Below, piece by piece: positions 4,347-33,000 of a stretch of 33,000 nucleotides of DNA; position 1 is the stretch's first letter, and each line of letters begins with the position of its first letter. Source of the DNA: Botryllus schlosseri (Eukaryota); contig CM119386.1 of the NCBI GenBank assembly GCA_051294905.1, positions 12,152,001-12,185,000 of the forward strand, given 5' to 3'. Both the position numbers and the translations under genes were made by a program. The notes below the pieces were generated by a model. That model was not told where the DNA came from and did not search any database. It saw nothing but the letters and a program-made list of their open reading frames with translations.

Positions 4347-5922
4347 CAGAGTTGGATCAATTACATTATTACAGTTCAATTACAATTACAATTACAATTA
4401 CTTTCATGCATGTTTCAATTACATTACAATTACAATTACTCCATGCTAAAAATATCAAATTACAATTACAATTACAATTACTCCTTGCATGCTTCAATTA
4501 CATTACAATTACAATTACAATTGCTGCTGTTGAACATGTAATTGAATAATCATAAATTCAACCGTGCTCCTTGACAACCGTAGCGTCGTATTTAACAACG
4601 ATTCAAGTCTAGTTCAGATTGTGTAGTAATAAATGCGTTTATGTGCGTACACCGTACATAGTATGCTATGTAAGATGTCATTGTGACGTAATATAAGCGT
4701 GTTTTGTATGCTCGGTAATTATGGCTCACGTAATTGGAAATGTAAAATGTTATTTACCTAATTACCTATGGGTTAGGATTAAGGATAGGGTGCAGTATGT
4801 CATTGAAAAATTATTATAATATATGCACGTGTTGGATTTGCGTATATAGTATATAATTAAAGAAATAATATTATTTTTATCGAGGGACGTAGGAATTAGG
4901 ATGATGAGTAAAAACAAAACCGTGCTTTGTCAGATAAGACGTTATATAATATCCAGTGGTCTGGTTAGTTAGCCAGACGAAGTAACGATGAAGCATCGTG
5001 ATCTGAAATCGTATTGTAGATTGCCAACCCACGGATAGATGCGCAAGATGTGAGTCACGGATGAATGAATCGTCAAACGTACTGCAGAGCCGGCTAAAAG
5101 CAGCAAACTTTGTAGTCCTAGAGCTGGCGATCCATGCGTCCAAATTTGATGCATCTGGTCTTTATCGTAAGCTATTGATGTACTAATTCCGAAAATACAA
5201 AATAAAATCTTGTCAGGGCAATGTAATTACTCCAAAATAGCCGTTTAAGGCCGACTGTTCTGAAAAGTGAGAGCGCTGCAGCAGCATGACCACAACAATT
5301 ACCAATTACGCCCAGCGATTGTTCAGAACAATGCCGATTCCCATACTTTCACGACTATTTTGGGATGGTACCATTGCCTGGAAATATACTTTTATTGCGG
5401 AATCAGTGCGACACTAGCTTCCGATTAGGACCATACATATCAAATTTCGACGCTTGGATCGCCAGCTATGGGACTATCAATTCTGCTGCTTTTAGCCGGC
5501 TCAGCAGTTCGCTTCTCGGCGTATTCAATCTTGAGTCACGTGTTGCGAATCCATCCGTTGGTTAGTAATCTAAAAATTGTATACAATGGCAGCCGAGGCC
5601 AGCATAGCGGTAAAAATAAAAAAACTTCACCCGCAAGGGCGCAGTCAAGGGTTTACGCGAATGGATCCACCAAATTCCTTGTCGACATTTAAAGAGAATG
5701 CATTATAAGTCAATTATTTTATGTTGTGCTTGTCAGGTCTCAATAGCAATTTAATGTAATTAAAATTGTAATTGAGCAAAATTTTTGTCAAATTACAATT
5801 ACAATTACAATTACAATTACACAAAATAAAAATGCTTCAATTACAATTACATTACAATTACATTGAAAAATGTAATTAAGTACATTCAATTACAATTACA
5901 AATTACAATTGATCCAACTCTG
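4347..5922 (+). mobile_element. Non-autonomous hAT-like element, (CAATTA)n family, copy 1
   Basis: 16-bp TIRs CAGAGTTGGATCAATT / AATTGATCCAACTCTG. Flanks GTCCCTG and GTCCCTAG form an imperfect TSD. (CAATTA)n arrays at both ends. A second copy starts at 31431. Confidence 0.9.
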
Positions 5923-12588: not shown

Positions 12589-12659
12589 GGGAGAGTGACC
12601 CGAAGGCAACGAACGAACTATCTCAATGTCAAGCCGGGATCTCATCTGACATATCAAGA
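12589..12659 (+). CDS. Cassette A post-I exon (start of blade 3)
   Basis: G-ESDPKATNELSQCQAGISSDISR. CQAGISS matches the motif I recall from vertebrate integrin alpha4. Phase 1 to 0; donor GTAAGT. Confidence 0.85.
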
Positions 12660-24448: not shown

Positions 24449-24639
24449 GAGGCTAGCGCGTGTCACGAATAATGCGCGCGCGAACAAAATCCAAGCCTTC
24501 GCTGTTGGCATCGCTGAATACGAGATGGAGGAATTGCTGATGATTGCCGGAGACCCGAGTCGGGTTTTTACCGAGAAGAACTTCGAGAATTTGTCAAATA
24601 CAATAACAAAACTGCAAGTGCGAATACGCGCGCTAGAAG
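24449..24639 (+). CDS. Cassette B alphaI exon 4
   Basis: RLARVTNNARANKIQAFAVGIA...ELLMIAGDPSRVFTEKNF...RIRALEG; phase 2 to 1. Confidence 0.96.
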
Positions 24640-25335: not shown

Positions 25336-25421
25336 GAGGTAACACATTCAGTCAAAACCTAACCAACGCAGGCCTGGACCACTGTGGTATCGGAAGTTCC
25401 GTCGAGTTCGATAGTAAAGAG
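25336..25421 (+). CDS. Cassette B post-I exon (start of blade 3)
   Basis: G-GNTFSQNLTNAGLDHCGIGSSVEFDSKE shares LxxCxxGxS with 12589-12659. Phase 1 to 0; donor GTAAGG. Confidence 0.87.
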
Positions 25422-26072
25422 GTAAGGGACTGTTCACAATAAGTTGGTGCGTTGAACGTGAGATATTTGGTGATGAGTGGTTTGTGAGTGGATGTGTGAC
25501 GCAGCTGCATAATCACATCCTGCAGGATAGGGTTACAGTATGACGAACGGTACGGAGGGTAAGTCACCACGGTTTTACTCCTCGTGTATGACGGTCTGAA
25601 TAGGGAATTGCAGGAACATCTTTTCTGATACGTTCCGATCAGTTTCATCACGAAGAACTAGAATAGCAACGTGCACATCTTGGTAGGTTGGTTTTGACTT
25701 TCCTATAGCAGTCGGCTTCATTCGACATCGTGTCAATGCAGTCCGAACGATAAAATACCGACAGGGATCGCAGTTTAAATACGACCATATGTAAAGAACT
25801 CCTGATCTAGCGTTTGGCAGTACTCTCAATTTGTAGCCTGACCACGGGGACTTTCCCCATGAACTTACGGCACACGTGAAAAGAGGGAGAGAGAGAGAGA
25901 TTTTTATTGCTTCATTAACCGGAACATTAACAACAGAAAAATTGAAGACTTGAAAACAATAATGCATTCACAATGATATAGGTGACTGTGCGTGTTTCTT
26001 TCTGTCTAACAGTACAGACGGATGCCGGGAACAGTTGATGAGGGGAGTCAATATAAAGCATTACATATATAG

Positions 26073-26092
26073 GTGTGTGTGTGTGTGTGTGT
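26073..26092. repeat. (GT)10 microsatellite; a (GA)n run also lies at about 25886-25900
   Basis: Read directly from the sequence. Confidence 0.9.
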
Positions 26093-26421
26093 ATGTGTAT
26101 TTTCTGAGTAGGACGTTTGGTAAAAAGATTTAAAGTGAATCCACCGGTCTAGCAAAGGTATTAATGTAATCTATAAGCAGTAGACGTCAGGGATATCTAT
26201 AACTATATATCTTCCTGGCAGTACGTAACTGTGGCAACTCCAATTACGCTATCCTATCAAATGTATGGTAAGTTAACGTTACTGAAATATTGATATATTT
26301 CCATACGAAAGTAGACCAAGCTTTCGCGTGGTAGAGTAGGCCACTGTACAAAGTACCGCGGAAACATACTGACAGAAGTCATTTCTATGTTTACTTGATG
26401 AAATGAGAACGTGTTAGTGAT

Positions 26422-26565
26422 TTATGCAGGTTGATTTGACGGAGCAGTGTTTTCGTACAGCTCGCTTTCGGCCTCGTTGCTGGCAGCACCTTCTTCTTTC
26501 ACGAGTTGTTCGCTCGACTGGTGTTGCTGTAGCTTTGTGCGGTAATTATTTTCAAAAAATCCCGC
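26422..26565 (-). CDS. Minus-strand integrin alpha, last exon (cytoplasmic tail)
   Basis: ggtctcctttcag|AGFFENNYRTKLQQ...SELYENTAPSNQPA*. GFF follows LWK at the usual phase-0 junction. Candidate AATAAA on the - strand at 25903-25908. Confidence 0.92.
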   Translation of the reverse strand, partial: AGFFENNYRTKLQQHQSSEQLVKEEGAASNEAESELYENTAPSNQPA

Positions 26566-26899
26566 CTGAAAGGAGACCATCTAATTTTAATAAGAGCCAT
26601 AAGGGATAAGCGACACAAATATAAGCAAATATTAACATTATGTGATCTAGTTAGTCAATGGCGAATTTTCACTGATGATTTCCATTTCGTGTATCTTGGA
26701 TGATTTCGGATTCGCTGATATCTAATTCTTGAAAGTACAGACCATGGTTTTTAGTACAGATTATGGTTTTGGGCTCACACGAATTTGAAATCTGAAATTT
26801 GAAAATTTGAAATCTGAAAATCAGTTCAGAAGGCCATTGACACTTTTCCATCACGCGGTAGCCTGATAGACCTCAAAAATTTTGCATACAATGCCTTAC

Positions 26900-27028
26900 C
26901 TTCCACAATATTAGCGTCAGCAGACAAATGACGAGGAATCCAACGGCCGCAGCAACGATAACGAAAGTTAACTCGCCTGTTGTCTCCGTCTCCCTGATTG
27001 GAATATATTTTTGAACTTGCACAATAAT
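26900..27028 (-). CDS. Minus-strand integrin alpha, transmembrane exon
   Basis: IIVQVQKYIPIRETETTGELTFVIVAAAVGFLVICLLTLILWK; tttcctcgcag|...|GTAAGG, phase 0 to 0. Confidence 0.94.
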
Positions 27029-27364
27029 CTGCGAGGAAACATCAAGTCAGACGTAAGTGTCAGAGCCGAACATGTTCAGCGCGGAAGGGCAACTCTATTG
27101 TATATTAGGTCCTGCTAATTGGGATGACGTTTCCAGTCTAACTACGAATCTACATGTACTATCCATCGTACGTGAAGATATCCCGTTTGGGATACGAGGA
27201 ATTAAAGTTTTTTCTCAATGGACAAGGCGTGGTTTTATCATCCGATAATGATTGTGTTTTAATGAATTGCGTCTTTTCATCTTTTATCTTTATGCATATT
27301 AAAAATAAATCTTGTCGGTGTCAATGCAGAGTTGAACTTGCACTAATCGGCCTAAATTGCTTAC

Positions 27365-27469
27365 TTCGTCCTCGTCAAACATCCGTTCCCCATGCTCACT
27401 ATATAAATTATCAGGAGTCTCGATTGACGCGATTGAAAGTCGTGACCTCAAATTTAGGAAGGTCCTGTT
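27365..27469 (-). CDS. Minus-strand integrin alpha, calf-2 C-terminal exon
   Basis: NRTFLNLRSRLSIASIETPDNLYSEHGERMFDEDE; tttttattcag|...|GTAAGC, phase 0 to 0. Confidence 0.85.
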
Positions 27470-27610
27470 CTGAATAAAAACAGATATTTCCATTCATTAT
27501 TCGCTCGAAATACACATTAATACGCTTTGCGACAATTGATAGCCTATAAATACGCTTTTCAAAAATTGATCGCCTATCGATATGCATATCACGAGTGTAA
27601 TTCAACTCAC

Positions 27611-27748
27611 GGTCTGTTGGAATGTAACACTGGAGCTCCACAGCCTGAAGTGCGCTACGAATGAGAGCTCCCTCGTCAATCCGAGATTTGCAACTTCGCA
27701 TTTCAATTCTGCGCAACTATGGTTGGTCTCAAATGCGCCGTTACAGTT
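27611..27748 (-). CDS. Minus-strand integrin alpha, calf-2 exon
   Basis: NCNGAFETNHSCAELKCEVANL...FRLWSSSV has the C..CxxxxC...LWxS calf-2 pattern. tacttttag|...|GTGAGT. Confidence 0.9.
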
Positions 27749-28002
27749 CTAAAAGTAGCAATATTCAGTGGATATGCAAGCATGTTTTTATGCTTTGTGC
27801 AACGCAAATCGCTGGGTGCTTCTATGTGTTCGTTTATCCTGTCAATATAAGTATAGGCCAACTTCCTCGGCGTCTTTGGCATATTTGATCCAACCGTGAT
27901 GATTATCGAGGAAATGCACACGATATTGATAGCACCAATAGATCACTTTCTCTCGACTTGGAACTTCTTTTCCGGTCGATCTTAGTCCATAGCGATTATA
28001 AG

Positions 28003-29200
28003 CAGAGGTGGTCAGTAACGAAGTAGGCTACTTCTACTTTTTCGAAGTACTCAAGTAGTTTTCCTCTACTTTTGGTACTTACTCAGGTAGATCTGATTTT
28101 CGCTACTTCTACTTAGTAATATTTTGTGATCTACTTACTTACTTTTCGCTATTTTCAGTTTGTCAAGTAGAAGTAGTTTAATCCTCCAATCGGGAAGATA
28201 GCCTGAGGAATTTCGGGGCTGTTTTCACGGAGCATCAACATTTCATGTTCATAAAATTTGAGTAAAGCCCAGAATTTTCGTTGCGCGTCGCGCGCAGTGG
28301 CTATGAAGTATAGCCAATATGATTTCACTATGGTATCTGTGAATATAATTTAGGTAGCCGGTTGGCGTGGTTCCGTTCACACCGCGTTGTCGCCCTTCGC
28401 CATATCAAATTTTTCATCACAGTATATAATATTATAGCTCATCATAACGTTTGAAACTGATGTTTCGCAATCTAGCATTTATGCCTACTTATCAAATCGT
28501 AATCTAGCAGTCCATGGCGTGCCCTAATCTGGACCATGAAATACATGTTCCGGTTTTAGATATAGTATTTATATTTCACTTTCAATTCCCGTGAGTTCTA
28601 ATTAATATCAGTTCTTTTGTCTGGATAACATACATGTTGAAGTATAAAAACAAGTGTGGTAATGCCTTTAATTTCCGGAAAAAAGCTACACAATATGGCA
28701 TTTTTACGACCCACCATATTTTTTATTAATGTTTACTAATTGCGCCAAGTCTTTACACCGTATCCTACAACTTCTCCGTATTGCTCTTCGATGGGGGAGG
28801 GCGCCATATACCATGATATTTTCTAAAACGTGCTGTCCGAGTAAACAGAGGATTAGTATCGCATTTCCATATCAATACTATTTTTTTCATCCCATGATGC
28901 GGACGAATTCTTATGCAGTCGAAAATTGGATACCTTCTGGTATGCAACAATAAGAATCAAGCTCTGCACCTTTCGCATAGCTCAATTTGCACCTTTTGAC
29001 AATCCATGTGAACGAATTACGATCGTTTTCACAACTACTTACTTACTTGAGTAGATTTAAAGTCAGTCAATTCTGCTTCTACTTCAAGTAGTTTTAGGTT
29101 GCTTCTGGAAGAAGTACTTTTACTCGTACTTGAGTAGATGTTTTCGTCACTACTTCTACTTCTACTTGTGTAGCTTTCTGGACTACTTTGACCACATCTG
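28003..29200. mobile_element. Non-autonomous hAT-like element with (AAGTAG/CTACTT)n arrays
   Basis: TIRs CAGAGGTGGTCA / TGACCACATCTG (1 mismatch). TATAAG abuts both ends (imperfect TSD). CTACTT/AAGTAG arrays lie at both ends. Confidence 0.8.
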
Positions 29201-31430
29201 TATAAGCGCATAGAAATATCAGATTCTTCCCATCAAGGCTAAATTCCCCAACTGGTTACAATTTAGGCTTATAGTGTTATAGATCAGAAACGTTGAGTAT
29301 ACAATTTGGGATTGAGTGCAGTAGCCGTGTTGCTTGGAACGACACTATTCTCCAGTATTTTACTGGGACTGATATGACTTGCAAAGTAGTACAGACGTAT
29401 TTAACTTTAAAAGAATATTTGTACGATATTGTGGTCGTACCAGTGTCACTTGATTCATTTGAAACTTGCGAGAAGCAAATCATGGCTTTACACGCAGGTA
29501 TACTAGACTGACACGATATGGGTTATCGAATGATGCGTCAGAGCTCGTACATCTGCGGCATTATTACTATATCTTCTGAAACAGGGATTATCCTCATTTT
29601 TCTCAGTCCGCCCTCATCATGTTTTGAGTATTAGGCTACGATTCAGAGACGACGAAAAACGGTCAAATTGCTACAAAGTACACGTGGAAATCGACTTTTT
29701 CTGGAACTGCCGCGGAGGTTGTCTAAAAATAGGTTAACCGAACGGGAATTGTCCATGGAAACCCGCATGTAAGTTACCGACGTGGATGGCTGACTTTATT
29801 TATCTTTTCAGTAGTCAACTAAACTAACTGGATGGTCATCTTTATGTGTATAAATGTCCCATATTTATTTATCTTATTGTAAGTTGAAAAAAGTACCCTC
29901 TTCTTCGGTTCTTAAAATATGGTCACCCTATCCGAAACCTCTTCGGACTCCGAGGTGAGGTTCATAATTGTGCCCAGTTAACCTATGATTCGTCTGGACT
30001 CAATAGTGGAAAGTCAATGGTGCTTTAATAATAATAATTTATTATTCCTACCAATTCATCAGCGTCGATTGGTTCCGTGGCTGGCGTTATCGTATAAGAT
30101 GTTTGATTCGTGTCATTACCAGCCAATGGCTGGATCGGTAACTGATATGGATTAACCTTTGATTTATCGCACGAACACGAAACCTGTAGTGCAAAGATGA
30201 TGTATCATTAAAACAATTCAACGTGGCTGAAAAATGAAATAAGCATGCAAAATTTGACGTTTCTAACCCTAACTAAATCTTACCCCAGCGTCGATGGGCG
30301 AACACTCGACATCGTACAGATATAAAAGAGGATTGTTGTCATGTATCAACCACGGCCATTGGAAGCTCATCACGCTTTTCGACACAGCTGCATATCCAGA
30401 TTTGATCTATTGAAACATGGAATCTGGTGAATAGGAACCATGATTTACTTACATTATACCAAGGACACAACACCTACGTTGTGTGCTTGTACTTGGCTAA
30501 TTTATTACTGTACATTTGCACACGCACATTACGCATCCATAACATCCAAGATATTAAACGCCGGTTGGGAAAATACGCGATTGTAAAAAAAACAGCTTTA
30601 TAAATATTAGTATACCTTTTAGTGTATGTAAGTAGCCCATAACTCAATGTTTATCTACTTTATTTTACCTTGAATCTCATAGAGATATCGGATGAATTTC
30701 CTCCAATATTCGATACACTGCTGATGTTATTGTATATATTGGTCGAATTTATTGTAACTCTCGCGTCACTGCTTTGCCTTTGAAGGAATCAAAATATCAG
30801 TAAACATCTCCATATACCTACATTAGAGTCCTTTAACAAAATGTTACAAAGCAACTGACTTTTGTACATCCAAATATGATACATATCGGATTGGCCTCTC
30901 CCCGTACCAAGCGTTGTTTTCTGGATTGATTTCTTGCGAGTATGGTGAACTGGAGTCGTCACAGCATGAAAGAGGAAATAGATTTGCATCGGGACAGCGT
31001 TGTGGTGGTAAGCAGAAAGTCTAACAAATGGCTAAACTACATTTCATGTAAAATTATAGCGGTAGAAGCAACCGAACAGTAGGTACACGAAAGATCCTTT
31101 TACCAAGCATATCTGATTTTAGAAACATTTAAAAACCTGCTCATATATATGGCTGGAAGTAAGGCGTTTGTATTTGGAGAGGGTACTGAATACGTCGATA
31201 CCACATTTTTTAGCCTTCCTGTGCTGGTTCACGAAAACCGATGCTACTCAGCCCCTGGTTTGTATGCCCATAAGGACCTATTCACATTGGCATAGAAGTG
31301 TAAGCAAAACAATATACCAGAAACTGTCGTTTATCTAATTTGCACCCTGTGCTATATGTTGGAATTCGGTGAAGTACAGGATTTTCTTTAACATTGTACC
31401 TACCAACTTCTTATAAAAGTACATGTGTAC

Positions 31431-33000
31431 CAGAGTTGGATCAATTACATTATTTCAGTGTAATTACAATTACAATTACAATTACTTTCATGCATGTTTC
31501 AATTACATTACAATTACAATTACTCCATGCTAAAAATATCAAATTACAATTCAAATTACAATTACTCCTTGCATGCTTCAATTACATTACAATTACAATT
31601 ACAATTGCTGCTGTTGAACATGTAATTGAATAATCATAAATTCAACCGTGCTCCTTGACAACCGTAGCGTCGTAATTAACAACAATTCAAGTATTCATGT
31701 TTCATTCATGATGCGCAAATACCCGTTAATTATTAAAAAGAAAAAACGTTTTCGAACTATATGCAGTATGTCGTTGAAAAAAGTATTATAATATATGCAA
31801 GTGTTGGATTTGCGTATATAGTATATAATTAAAGAAATAATATCATTTTTATCGAGGGACGTAGGAATTAGGATGAGGAGTAAAAACAGAACCGTGCTTT
31901 GTCAGATAAGACGTTATATAATATCCAGTGATCTGGTTAGTTAGCTAGACGAAGTAACGATGCAGCATCGTGATCTGAAATCGTATTGTAGATTGCCAAC
32001 CCACTGATAGATGCGCAAGATGTGAGTCACGGATGAATGCACCGACAAACGTACTGCAGAGCCGCCTAAAAGCAGCAAACCTTGTAGTCCTAGATCTGGC
32101 GATCCAAGCGTCTAAATTTGATGCATCTGGTCTTTATCGTACGCTATCGATGCACTAATTCCGAAAATACAAATTAAAATCTCGTCAGGGCAATGTAACT
32201 GCTCCAAAATAGCCGTTTAAGGCCGACTGTTTTGAAAAGTGAGAGCGCCGCAGCAGCATGACCACAACAATGATCAATTACGCCCAGCTCCTCCTCGCCA
32301 CTTCATCCGCGTCAGCGGTGTCTTACAAAAAGCCTAGAGGTGGGCCGTGCTATAAGTCGGCAGTTACGGAAAATAACAAGAATATCGGCCTGGTGTAAAT
32401 GACCATAGTAGTCGAAAAACACCATGAATACCCCAAAAACAAACAAACAAACAAATTACGCCCAGCGATTGTTCAGAACAATGCCGATTCCCAGACTTTC
32501 ACGACTATTTTGGGATGGTACCATTGCCTGGAAATATACTTTTATTGCGGAATCAGTGCGACACTAGCTTCCGATTAGGACCATACATATCAAATTTCGA
32601 CGCTTGGATCGCCAGCTATGGGACTATCAATTCTGCTGCTTTTAGCCGGCTCAGCAGTTCGCTTCTCGGCGTATTCAATCGTGAGTCGCGTGTTGAGAAT
32701 CCATCCGTTGGTTAGTAAGCTAATAATTGTATACAATGGCAGCCGAGGCCAGCATAGCGGTAAAAATAAAAAAAACTTCGCCCGCAAGGGCGCAGTCAAG
32801 GACTTCCGCAAATGGATCCATCAAATTCCTTGTCGACATTTAAAGAGAATGCATTATAAGTCAATTATTTTATGTTGTGCTTGTCAGGTCTCAATAGCAA
32901 TTTAATGTAATTGAAATTGTAATTGAGCAAAATTTTTGGCAAATTACAATTACAATTACAATTACACAAAATAAAAATGCTTCAATTACAATTACATTGA
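31431..33000 (+). mobile_element. (CAATTA)n family element, copy 2 (runs off the window end)
   Basis: Starts CAGAGTTGGATCAATT and is colinear and highly similar to 4347-5922 in the same orientation. Confidence 0.92.
32289..32453 (+). mobile_element. 165-bp 5'-truncated retroposed insertion (SINE/LINE 3' end)
   Basis: Absent from copy 1 of the host element. Flanked by a 13-bp direct repeat AATTACGCCCAGC (32276-32288, 32454-32466) and ends in an (AAAC)n tail. Confidence 0.88.

What the first reader, a model, noticed from the sequence alone, without database searches (positions are those of the whole stretch)
25422..27748. An integrin-alpha 3' end on the opposite strand, about 1 kb after cassette B stops
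Four clean minus-strand exons encode 171 residues (calf-2, TM, tail), part of what A and B lack, with the stop codon facing B. This is the geometry expected if the 3' half of the gene were inverted (real, polymorphic or mis-assembled). It also fits a separate convergent paralog nested in, or blocking, the + strand unit. An invertible constant region would be highly unusual. An antisense nested paralog would imply transcriptional interference.
Basis: partly seen in the sequence, partly recalled or inferred. Interest (0 to 1): 0.82.

Follow-up and report, generated by a model that had tools for sequence, protein, structure and literature searches.

The report
Tail of a separate integrin gene
The four minus-strand exons are the expressed 3' end of a complete, separate integrin alpha gene that faces cassette B tail to tail, so they are not an inverted half of the plus-strand unit, whose missing half probably lies about 296 kb further on.

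Summary
Exons 27748-27611, 27469-27365, 27028-26900 and 26565-26422 are all phase 0 with AG/GT borders. They encode 171 aa: the end of calf-2, a TM helix and a WKAGFFENNYR tail. A transcript contig joins them exactly and links them to the next upstream exon (30183-30052).

The inversion reading fails. The minus-strand exons continue past 33 kb through calf-1, thigh, blades 7-3, a four-exon alphaI domain (DGSGS MIDAS, SLEGT) and blades 2-1, up to a signal-peptide exon at about 48.6 kb. Twenty-five GT-AG exons thread one 1230-aa ORF. This gene (M1) is the first of four tandem minus-strand paralogs. Tandem alphaI integrin arrays are already described in ascidians, so the gene itself is ordinary.

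The 1 kb after cassette B is M1's 3'UTR plus a spacer. It is unique sequence with no inverted repeats.

Seen on the way: at least seven plus-strand N-terminal cassettes have no C-terminal half. Four of them (A, B and two upstream) end in a phase-0 donor. The only plus-strand C-terminal unit on the contig starts 296 kb downstream of B with a phase-0 acceptor. One cDNA contig links B to that unit, through a non-canonical junction. M1-M4 may therefore lie between variable heads and a shared constant region.

The parts
26422..26565 (-). M1 last coding exon: AGFFENNYR... cytoplasmic tail and TAA stop (26424-26422)
   Evidence: X17 record 10 and X10 record 3 cover 26107-26564 without a break.
26900..27028 (-). 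M1 exon: end of calf-2 linker plus the transmembrane helix, ending ...LILWK
   Evidence: X17 record 10 piece 26899-27028. 46% identical over 24 aa to the TM exon of paralog M3.
27365..27469 (-). M1 calf-2 exon (35 aa)
   Evidence: X17 record 10 piece 27365-27469.
27611..27748 (-). M1 calf-2 exon (46 aa) with the C..C...FRLW motif
   Evidence: Pfam Integrin_A_Ig_3 positions 144-175, E 0.033; best PDB match is integrin alpha-5 calf-2, not significant (E 0.8); 41-47% identical to the minus-strand paralogs, 35% to the plus-strand unit. RNA contigs.
30052..30183 (-). M1 calf-2 exon directly upstream of the four in the finding
   Evidence: spliced to 27748 in X17 record 10 and X10 record 5; homologous exons in M2, M3 and M4.
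30284..30406 (-). M1 calf-2 exon
   Evidence: Integrin_A_Ig_3 positions 43-76, E 0.005; 34-40% identical to M2-M4. Phase fits.
30669..30768 (-). M1 calf-2 exon (borders inferred)
   Evidence: 43% identical to M3 and M4; phase-compatible GT-AG chain.
30860..31020 (-). Tentative extra M1 calf-1 exon
   Evidence: phase-compatible chain together with 33834-33703; weak similarity to M4, E 0.013. No RNA check.
25886..26421 (-). M1 3'UTR. Its end is inferred from the only AATAAA, at 25908-25903.
   Evidence: RNA contigs reach 26107, where a (CA)n repeat cuts them; poly(A) signal.
25336..25421 (+). Cassette B 'exon X' (blade-3 strand after alphaI). It ends in phase 0 at a GT donor. It belongs to the neighbouring plus-strand unit, not to M1.
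   Evidence: depth arithmetic shows X10 record 1 covers exactly these 86 nt and then leaves the genome. X17 record 8 leaves at 25384 into a plus-strand exon 296 kb away.
24450..24639 (+). Cassette B, last alphaI exon (...RIRALEG). Only the part that was laid is given.
   Evidence: RNA contigs X10 record 1 and X17 record 8; donor GAAG|GT at 24639/24640.

Best explanation
The four exons are the last four coding exons of a complete, transcribed integrin alpha-subunit gene of the alphaI type, here called M1, on the minus strand. M1 runs from an ATG and signal-peptide exon at window-relative 48598 (15.6 kb beyond the window's end) to the stop at 26422. It has at least 25 exons and spans about 22 kb. 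It encodes blades 1-2, an inserted VWA/alphaI domain with an intact MIDAS and an SLEGT internal-ligand motif, blades 3-7, thigh, calf-1, calf-2, one TM helix and a short tail. It is the first of four tandemly duplicated minus-strand paralogs (M1-M4, C16:12.178-12.40 Mb). Its 3' end faces the last exon of plus-strand cassette B across roughly 460 bp of spacer. This is an ordinary convergent arrangement, not an inverted gene segment. By family knowledge, the product would pair with a beta subunit and bind ligand through the alphaI MIDAS. That functional step is inferred. Gene structure, splicing of the last five exons and transcription are shown.
For: Exons and frame. Spliced RNA contigs from two studies cover the four exons plus exon 30183-30052. 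Minus-strand integrin exons run on in order beyond 33 kb. One 3693-nt ORF (1230 aa, a single terminal stop) threads 25 canonical GT-AG exons with compatible phases. Exon-level Pfam matches are co-linear: VWA 37 bits, FG-GAP 27 bits, then Ig_1, Ig_2 and Ig_3 in order. The blade-5 exon matches only integrin alpha chains in the PDB, at about 1e-8. Every M1 exon class has co-linear homologues in three further minus-strand genes. M1's calf-2 exon is closer to those genes (41-47%) than to the plus-strand C-terminal unit (35%). The interval 25422-26421 is unique, with no inverted repeats in 313 kb. A single poly(A) signal sits in the right place. Tandemly duplicated alphaI integrin genes of 26-27 exons are described in Ciona: PMC1145181.
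Against: Only the last five exons were checked against RNA. Upstream borders are inferred, and one or two calf-1 exons remain uncertain. Most single-exon Pfam scores for the leg domains fall below the curated cut-offs. The membrane-proximal motif is GFFEN rather than GFFKR. No single DNA contig from an independent sample spans 25.4-26.4 kb, because contigs break at two simple repeats and one run has a hole at 25650-25849. Co-linearity is therefore shown only piecewise.
Confidence: 0.93

Rival explanations
1. The minus-strand exons are the inverted 3' (constant) half of the plus-strand cassette gene, inverted either in the genome, as a polymorphism, or by mis-assembly.
For: Cassettes A and B do lack a C-terminal half on the plus strand nearby. 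The minus-strand stop codon faces B.
Against: The minus-strand gene has its own signal peptide, blades 1-3 and alphaI. Three more complete paralogs share its orientation. The spacer has no inverted repeats. Transcripts splice the four exons to upstream minus-strand exons. B's transcript contig continues into a plus-strand exon elsewhere. An orthologous 'headless' plus-strand C-terminal unit exists in a related species.
Confidence: 0.02
2. The four exons are a dead 3' fragment or a pseudogene copy left by duplication. The apparent upstream exons do not form a working gene.
For: Partial duplicates do occur in this cluster. One is a fragment copy of M2's 3' region at window-relative 98.7-105 kb. 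The GFFKR motif is degenerate.
Against: The four exons plus the next exon upstream are correctly spliced in RNA contigs of two studies, at a depth similar to neighbouring expressed exons. A stop-free 1230-aa frame runs across 25 exons with the MIDAS, Ca-binding loops and cysteines conserved.
Confidence: 0.04
3. M1 is a separate gene and in addition lies inside a very long plus-strand transcription unit. Pre-mRNA started at cassette B, or at earlier cassettes, runs about 296 kb through M1-M4 to a constant region at C16:12.473 Mb. M1 would then be an antisense nested gene open to transcriptional interference. This extends the best explanation rather than replacing it.
For: B's exon X donor (phase 0) is used and the transcript leaves the locus. 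One B contig continues into exon Z of the downstream plus-strand unit. That unit begins with a phase-0 acceptor and has no head of its own. There is no plus-strand poly(A) signal in the 1.6 kb after 25421.
Against: The only observed B-to-constant junction is non-canonical: mid-exon to mid-exon at an 8-nt microhomology, typical of template switching. A 296-kb intron would be about 100 times the usual intron here. Plus-strand carbonic-anhydrase genes and other cassettes with acceptor sites lie in the path. Trans-splicing of separate transcripts would give the same mRNA without read-through.
Confidence: 0.25

Closest known systems
Ascidian alphaI (alphaA)-domain integrin alpha chains, e.g. Ciona Ci-alpha5-8 (Ewan et al. 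2005, PMC1145181)
   Same: Integrin alpha subunits with an inserted VWA domain. The genes have about 26-27 exons, are multiplied by recent tandem duplication, and lie in clusters. M1-M4 show the same pattern.
   Different: The organism here is not identified. That it is a tunicate is inferred from the I/LEGT motif together with invertebrate-like gene structure. Orthology to particular Ciona chains was not tested. The tail motif is GFFEN.
Vertebrate alphaI integrins (ITGA1/2/10/11, ITGAL/M/X/D/E)
   Same: The domain order is the same. The alphaI domain sits between blades 2 and 3, with a DxSxS MIDAS and an (I/L)EGT internal ligand after the last alphaI helix (motif as described in PMC12422189).
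   Different: Only 30-50% local similarity at exon level. The basic pair of GFFKR is missing. No structure or ligand data.
Convergent or nested antisense neighbour genes
   Same: The two 3'-facing ends are separated by under 0.5 kb. M1 may lie between parts of another gene.
   Different: No overlap of mature transcripts was shown. Nesting depends on the unproven B-to-constant link.
Clustered variable-exon loci (protocadherin alpha/gamma, UGT1A) and trans-spliced loci (Drosophila mod(mdg4), lola). Relevant only to the surrounding plus-strand cassettes.
   Same: Several alternative 5' units each end in an open donor of the same phase, and a single downstream constant unit starts with a matching acceptor.
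   Different: Here each variable unit is a multi-exon cassette of about 10 exons, not one exon. Unrelated and opposite-strand genes lie in between. Canonical variable-to-constant cDNA junctions have not been seen.

Membership tests
Integrin alpha subunit, alphaI type | N-terminal signal peptide followed by an FG-GAP beta-propeller with DxDxDGxxD-type Ca2+ loops in the last blades | tested here: met
   Signal-peptide exon at 48598-48399. Ca loops DINGDKNDD, DLDRDGFND and DIDDNGFPD. Pfam FG-GAP 27.2 bits, above the cut-off. PDB matches are integrin alphas only, about 1e-8.
Integrin alpha subunit, alphaI type | VWA/I domain inserted between blades 2 and 3, with MIDAS DxSxS...T...D | tested here: met
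   Pfam VWA 37 bits, above the cut-off, on the exon at 44886-44718. DGSGS, then a Thr-containing RRTYT stretch taken as the MIDAS Thr, then LTDG. The domain is flanked by the blade-2 exon (VCAP...) and the blade-3 exons.
Integrin alpha subunit, alphaI type | (I/L)EGT internal-ligand motif at the C-terminal end of alphaI (PMC12422189) | tested here: met
   ...SAVSLEG|TSAG... across the exon junction 42840/42291. The junction is inferred, not RNA-checked.
Integrin alpha subunit, alphaI type | Thigh, calf-1 and calf-2 Ig-like leg domains in that order | tested here: inconclusive
   Single-exon Pfam matches are co-linear: Ig_1 positions 1-48, Ig_2 20-66, Ig_3 43-76 and 144-175. Each is below the curated cut-off. 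The spliced protein could not be handed to the tools. The second half of calf-1 is uncertain.
Integrin alpha subunit, alphaI type | Single TM helix followed at once by a GFFKR-type motif | tested here: inconclusive
   TM stretch FVIVAAAVGFLVICLLTLILW followed by KAGFFENNYR. GFF is kept but K-R is replaced by E-N.
Integrin alpha subunit, alphaI type | Forms a heterodimer with an integrin beta subunit | not testable with these tools
   Not attempted. The spliced sequences cannot be submitted.
Inverted or invertible gene segment | The segment lacks its own 5' part, is bounded by inverted repeats or breakpoints, and both orientations or junction reads are seen | tested here: not met
   M1 has its own complete 5' part. 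No inverted repeats. Transcripts are co-linear with the minus-strand gene.
Variable-cassette plus shared-constant locus (protocadherin/UGT1A-like). Applies to the neighbouring plus-strand unit only. | Several 5' units, each ending in a donor of the same phase, none with its own constant part, and one downstream constant unit | tested here: met
   Seven plus-strand alphaI first exons lie between 12.067 and 12.175 Mb. Exon X ends in phase 0 in four cassettes. Only one plus-strand blade-5 exon exists on the whole contig, at 12474053. Exon Y has a phase-0 acceptor.
Variable-cassette plus shared-constant locus (protocadherin/UGT1A-like). Applies to the neighbouring plus-strand unit only. | cDNAs that join each variable unit to the constant unit at canonical splice sites | tested here: inconclusive
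   There is one contig for cassette B only, and its junction is non-canonical, at a microhomology. The 30 nt that follow 25421 in X10 record 1 were not shown.

The most novel reading that the evidence does not exclude
M1-M4 lie between the two halves of a split, diversified integrin alpha locus. At least seven plus-strand multi-exon 'head' cassettes (signal peptide, blades 1-3, alphaI, exon X), including A and B, have no leg, TM or tail of their own. They would be joined alternatively to one 'headless' constant unit (exon Y through blades 4-7, thigh and calf-2; its TM and tail exons were not seen) at C16:12.473-12.481 Mb. The join would be either a roughly 0.3-Mb cis splice or trans-splicing of separate transcripts. 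This would give a family of receptors with variable ligand-binding heads on a common stalk. The headless unit, with at least 10 kb of integrin-free sequence before exon Y, is conserved in a related species.
Probability: 0.45. Interest if true: 0.8.

Novelty: new member of a known kind. Interest (0 to 1): 0.35.

Why it matters
For the finding itself, the result removes an exciting but wrong idea, an invertible constant region. What replaces it is an ordinary tandem-duplicated alphaI integrin gene. For the locus, it moves the open question. The plus-strand cassettes really are headpieces without legs, and the only candidate leg unit lies 296 kb downstream on the same strand, beyond four opposite-strand paralogs. 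If the heads are joined alternatively to that unit, this would be a new way of diversifying an adhesion or complement-type receptor in a chordate relative. It might also be a case of long-range splicing or trans-splicing between genes.

Tried and rejected
1. The one whole-library representative search, run with M1's blade-6 FG-GAP exon, was swamped by long multi-repeat FG-GAP proteins. It returned no integrin alpha, so no full-length reference protein was available.
2. Protein-database searches with exon Y and with B's last alphaI exon found no transcript-derived proteins of this species. Exon Y did give one genomic ORF of a relative, which proved useful.
3. Pfam family scans of the whole genome missed M1 entirely, so they are too insensitive exon by exon.
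4. Raw ORF-against-ORF comparison of the region was dominated by repeats and needed restricting.
The 40 kb upstream of exon Y was therefore probed only through genome-wide exon searches.
7. A canonical GT-AG placement for the X17 junction 25384|exon Z was sought by sliding within the 8-nt microhomology. None exists.
8. A plus-strand C-terminal half within -60 to +253 kb was sought by BLAST and by a Ca-loop motif search and not found.
9. Literature searches for alternative head cassettes or trans-splicing of tunicate integrins found nothing relevant.

Full report
**Position and material.** The window is G000:C16:12152001-12185000. I fetched flanks to make a gap-free 313-kb stretch, C16:12092001-12405000. 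Coordinates beyond 33000, and negative ones, are window-relative.

**Observation.** On the minus strand there are four blocks: 27748-27611, 27469-27365, 27028-26900 and 26565-26422. Each follows an AG and a pyrimidine tract, and the first three are followed by GT(A/G)AG. All are phase 0. Joined, they give 516 nt, which is 171 codons plus TAA. The peptide reads ...NHSCAELKCEVANLG...FVAHFRLWSSS... (calf-2), then ...ELTFVIVAAAVGFLVICLLTLILWK (TM), then AGFFENNYR... and a 47-aa tail.
- Pfam places the first exon at Integrin_A_Ig_3 positions 144-175 (E 0.033).
- Its best PDB match is the same motif in integrin alpha-5 calf-2, though the match is not significant (E 0.8).
- A 1043-nt contig of run X17 (record 10) lies on 26107-26564, 26899-27028, 27365-27469, 27611-27748 and 30052-30181. 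The 1-2-nt shifts are alignment ambiguities at G|G and GT.
- X10 record 5, from another study, joins 27611-27748 to 30052-30181.

The exons are therefore real, spliced as predicted and transcribed.

**The gene they belong to.** Minus-strand ORFs beyond the window carry, in order going upstream:
- calf-1 (NYGEYAFDP),
- a genu exon,
- three thigh exons,
- blade 7 (DIDDNGFPD), blade 6 (DLDRDGFND) and blade 5 (DINGDKNDD),
- blades 4 and 3,
- four VWA exons (DGSGS ... LTDG ... SLEG),
- blade 2 (VCAP...GACY) and blade 1 (LIFGRPRPG...GAIYSC),
- an exon starting MSVLLSSSWFWVGVLSFALVHC at 48598.

A dynamic-programming search restricted to AG/GT sites and compatible phases threads all anchors without a break. 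The resulting 25 exons give one 3693-nt ORF of 1230 aa with only the terminal stop. Two further calf-1 exons (33834-33703 and 31020-30860) are possible.

Exon-level Pfam matches are co-linear: VWA (37 bits), FG-GAP (27 bits), then Ig_1, Ig_2 and Ig_3. The blade-5 exon matches only integrin alpha chains in the PDB. The SLEG|T junction recreates the (I/L)EGT internal ligand described for alphaI integrins of tunicates and vertebrates (PMC12422189).

**Relatives in the locus.** Every class of M1 exon has co-linear homologues in three more minus-strand genes: M2 (140.8-173.2 kb), M3 (187.5-209.6 kb) and M4 (229-250 kb). A genome-wide search with a blade-5 exon finds only 13 such exons. Five are on C16: M1-M4 on the minus strand and one on the plus strand at 12474053. 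M1's calf-2 exon is 41-47% identical to M2-M4 and 35% to the plus-strand unit. Tandemly duplicated alphaI integrin genes of 26-27 exons are known from Ciona (PMC1145181). M1 is thus a new member of a known kind.

**The 1-kb interval.** The stretch 25422-26421 is unique within the 313 kb and has no inverted copy. RNA contigs cover 26107-26564. A (CA)n run at 26061-26106 and a (CT)n run at 25875-25909 cut the contigs. The only AATAAA on the minus strand is at 25908-25903. No poly(A) signal lies on the plus strand between 25422 and 27000. The interval is therefore M1's 3'UTR of about 0.5 kb plus roughly 460 bp of spacer. Independent DNA contigs (run X5) cover it piecewise but none spans it, and X5 has a hole at 25650-25849, which X10 record 2 (25507-25874) bridges. 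Co-linearity is supported but not proven by a single molecule.

**Verdict on the interpretation.** The inversion model predicted that the minus-strand exons would end at a blade-3 exon. Instead they continue to their own alphaI and signal peptide.

**What cassette B does instead.** B's last alphaI exon ends at 24639 (GAAG|GT). Its exon X is 25336-25421 and ends in phase 0 at GAG|GTAAGG. In X10, the contig covering 24450-24637 (record 1, depth 17.5) accounts for exactly 86 nt of depth in the exon X bin and has 30 more letters that do not lie on the stretch. So the donor at 25421 is used. In X17, the corresponding contig (record 8) covers exon X only as far as 25384 and then reads AGTACGTCGCCACCGGAGATC.

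That 21-mer occurs once in the 495-Mb genome, with one mismatch, at C16:12473321 on the plus strand. It lies in the middle of an exon encoding GYSVTTGTFNDETTEYVATGAPRYKLMGA, which is blade 4, called 'exon Z' here. The junction falls in an 8-nt repeat (GACCACTG) and cannot be placed at GT-AG. It therefore looks like a template switch, which most easily happens within one RNA molecule.

The locus around the 21-mer (L030) holds the following:
- exon Y (NGRLYLGAVGAYDWSG...), with a phase-0 acceptor and a phase-1 donor,
- exon Z,
- blades 5, 6 and 7.

Pfam matches for the thigh and calf-2 follow at 12.4755-12.4814 Mb. Exon X of B (phase 0) followed by exon Y (phase 0) reads like the X-Y junction inside M1.

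**The plus-strand architecture.** Genome-wide searches find plus-strand alphaI first exons at 12067.7, 12085.4, 12102.1, 12114.9, 12140.1, 12161.4 (A) and 12175.35 kb (B). They find signal-peptide exons at 12056.6, 12080.5, 12111.8, 12130.8 and 12154.2 kb. They find none between 12.43 and 12.473 Mb. No plus-strand blade 4-7, thigh or calf exon lies between -60 and +253 kb. Cassettes at -40 kb and -21 kb, and A and B, all end in a related exon X (...TN.L.QCQAGISS...) with lead 2 and trail 0 and a GT donor.

In a related species, a 22-kb contig carries the ortholog of the constant unit: exon Y 67%, exon Z 68%, blade 6 68% and blade 7 79% identical. There is no integrin exon on either strand in the 10 kb before exon Y, while the introns after it are at most 3 kb. 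A headless constant unit is thus conserved.

Together this makes it plausible (I put it at about 0.45) that the head cassettes are joined alternatively to one constant stalk, with M1-M4 and two carbonic-anhydrase genes lying in between. Whether this would be a giant cis intron or trans-splicing cannot be told here.

**Limits.** No full-length integrin reference could be obtained. Spliced proteins could not be given to the family, structure or fold tools. Only one read-laying run was allowed.

Noticed in passing
window 12589-12659 (+) and 25336-25421 (+); window-relative -8151..-8081 and -35173..-35103 (+): Four plus-strand head cassettes (A, B and two upstream) each end in a related short 'exon X' (...TN.L.QCQAGISS...) with the same phases (lead 2, trail 0) and a GT donor. 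After it, no further plus-strand integrin exon comes before the next cassette.
   Followed up: partly
L030 (G000:C16:12471821-12474841), exons at 1247-1397, 1460-1546, about 2278-2470, about 2621-2740 and 2830 onward (+): A 'headless' plus-strand integrin alpha unit starts with exon Y (phase-0 acceptor), 296 kb downstream of cassette B. It holds the only plus-strand blade-5 exon on contig C16. Its ortholog in a related species (L031) also has at least 10 kb without integrin exons before exon Y.
   Followed up: partly
window 25384 / C16:12473321: Transcript contig X17 record 8 passes from the middle of B's exon X into the middle of constant exon Z, at an 8-nt microhomology (GACCACTG). The junction is non-canonical and is probably a template switch.
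   Followed up: yes
window 27850-29250: A very high-copy repeat sits in M1's intron. Summed contig depth reaches about 1.2 million in a DNA run and thousands in RNA-type runs, with many internal joints. Copies lie at window-relative 58.5-59.9 kb, 117.3-117.8 kb and 247.3-248.6 kb.
   Followed up: no
window 31450-32980 and 4370-5840: A 1.5-kb element is present twice in the window in the same orientation, with 83-100% identity of translated ORFs. One copy is in an M1 intron, the other inside cassette A's region.
   Followed up: no
window 25507-25874: Run X10 has a 380-nt contig covering this stretch, beyond M1's predicted poly(A) site and after B's last exon. It could be a longer M1 3'UTR, plus-strand read-through or intron, or DNA carry-over. 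X17 has no cover here.
   Followed up: no
window-relative 80655-81518 and 118229-119127 (+), outside the window: Two copies of an alpha-carbonic-anhydrase-like gene (…QYHIHWG…GSEHTIDG…LHVVHYN) lie on the plus strand between M1 and M2. A reverse-transcriptase ORF lies at 54713-55951.
   Followed up: no
window-relative 98.7-105 kb (-), outside the window: A partial duplicate of the 3' region of paralog M2, including a calf-2-like exon, lies without the rest of a gene. It is probably a dead fragment.
   Followed up: no
G000:C16:12429122-12429289 (-): An extra minus-strand alphaI-like first exon, with one TGA reported in one of the two searches. No blade-5 exon was detected for it. Its status is unknown.
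   Followed up: no
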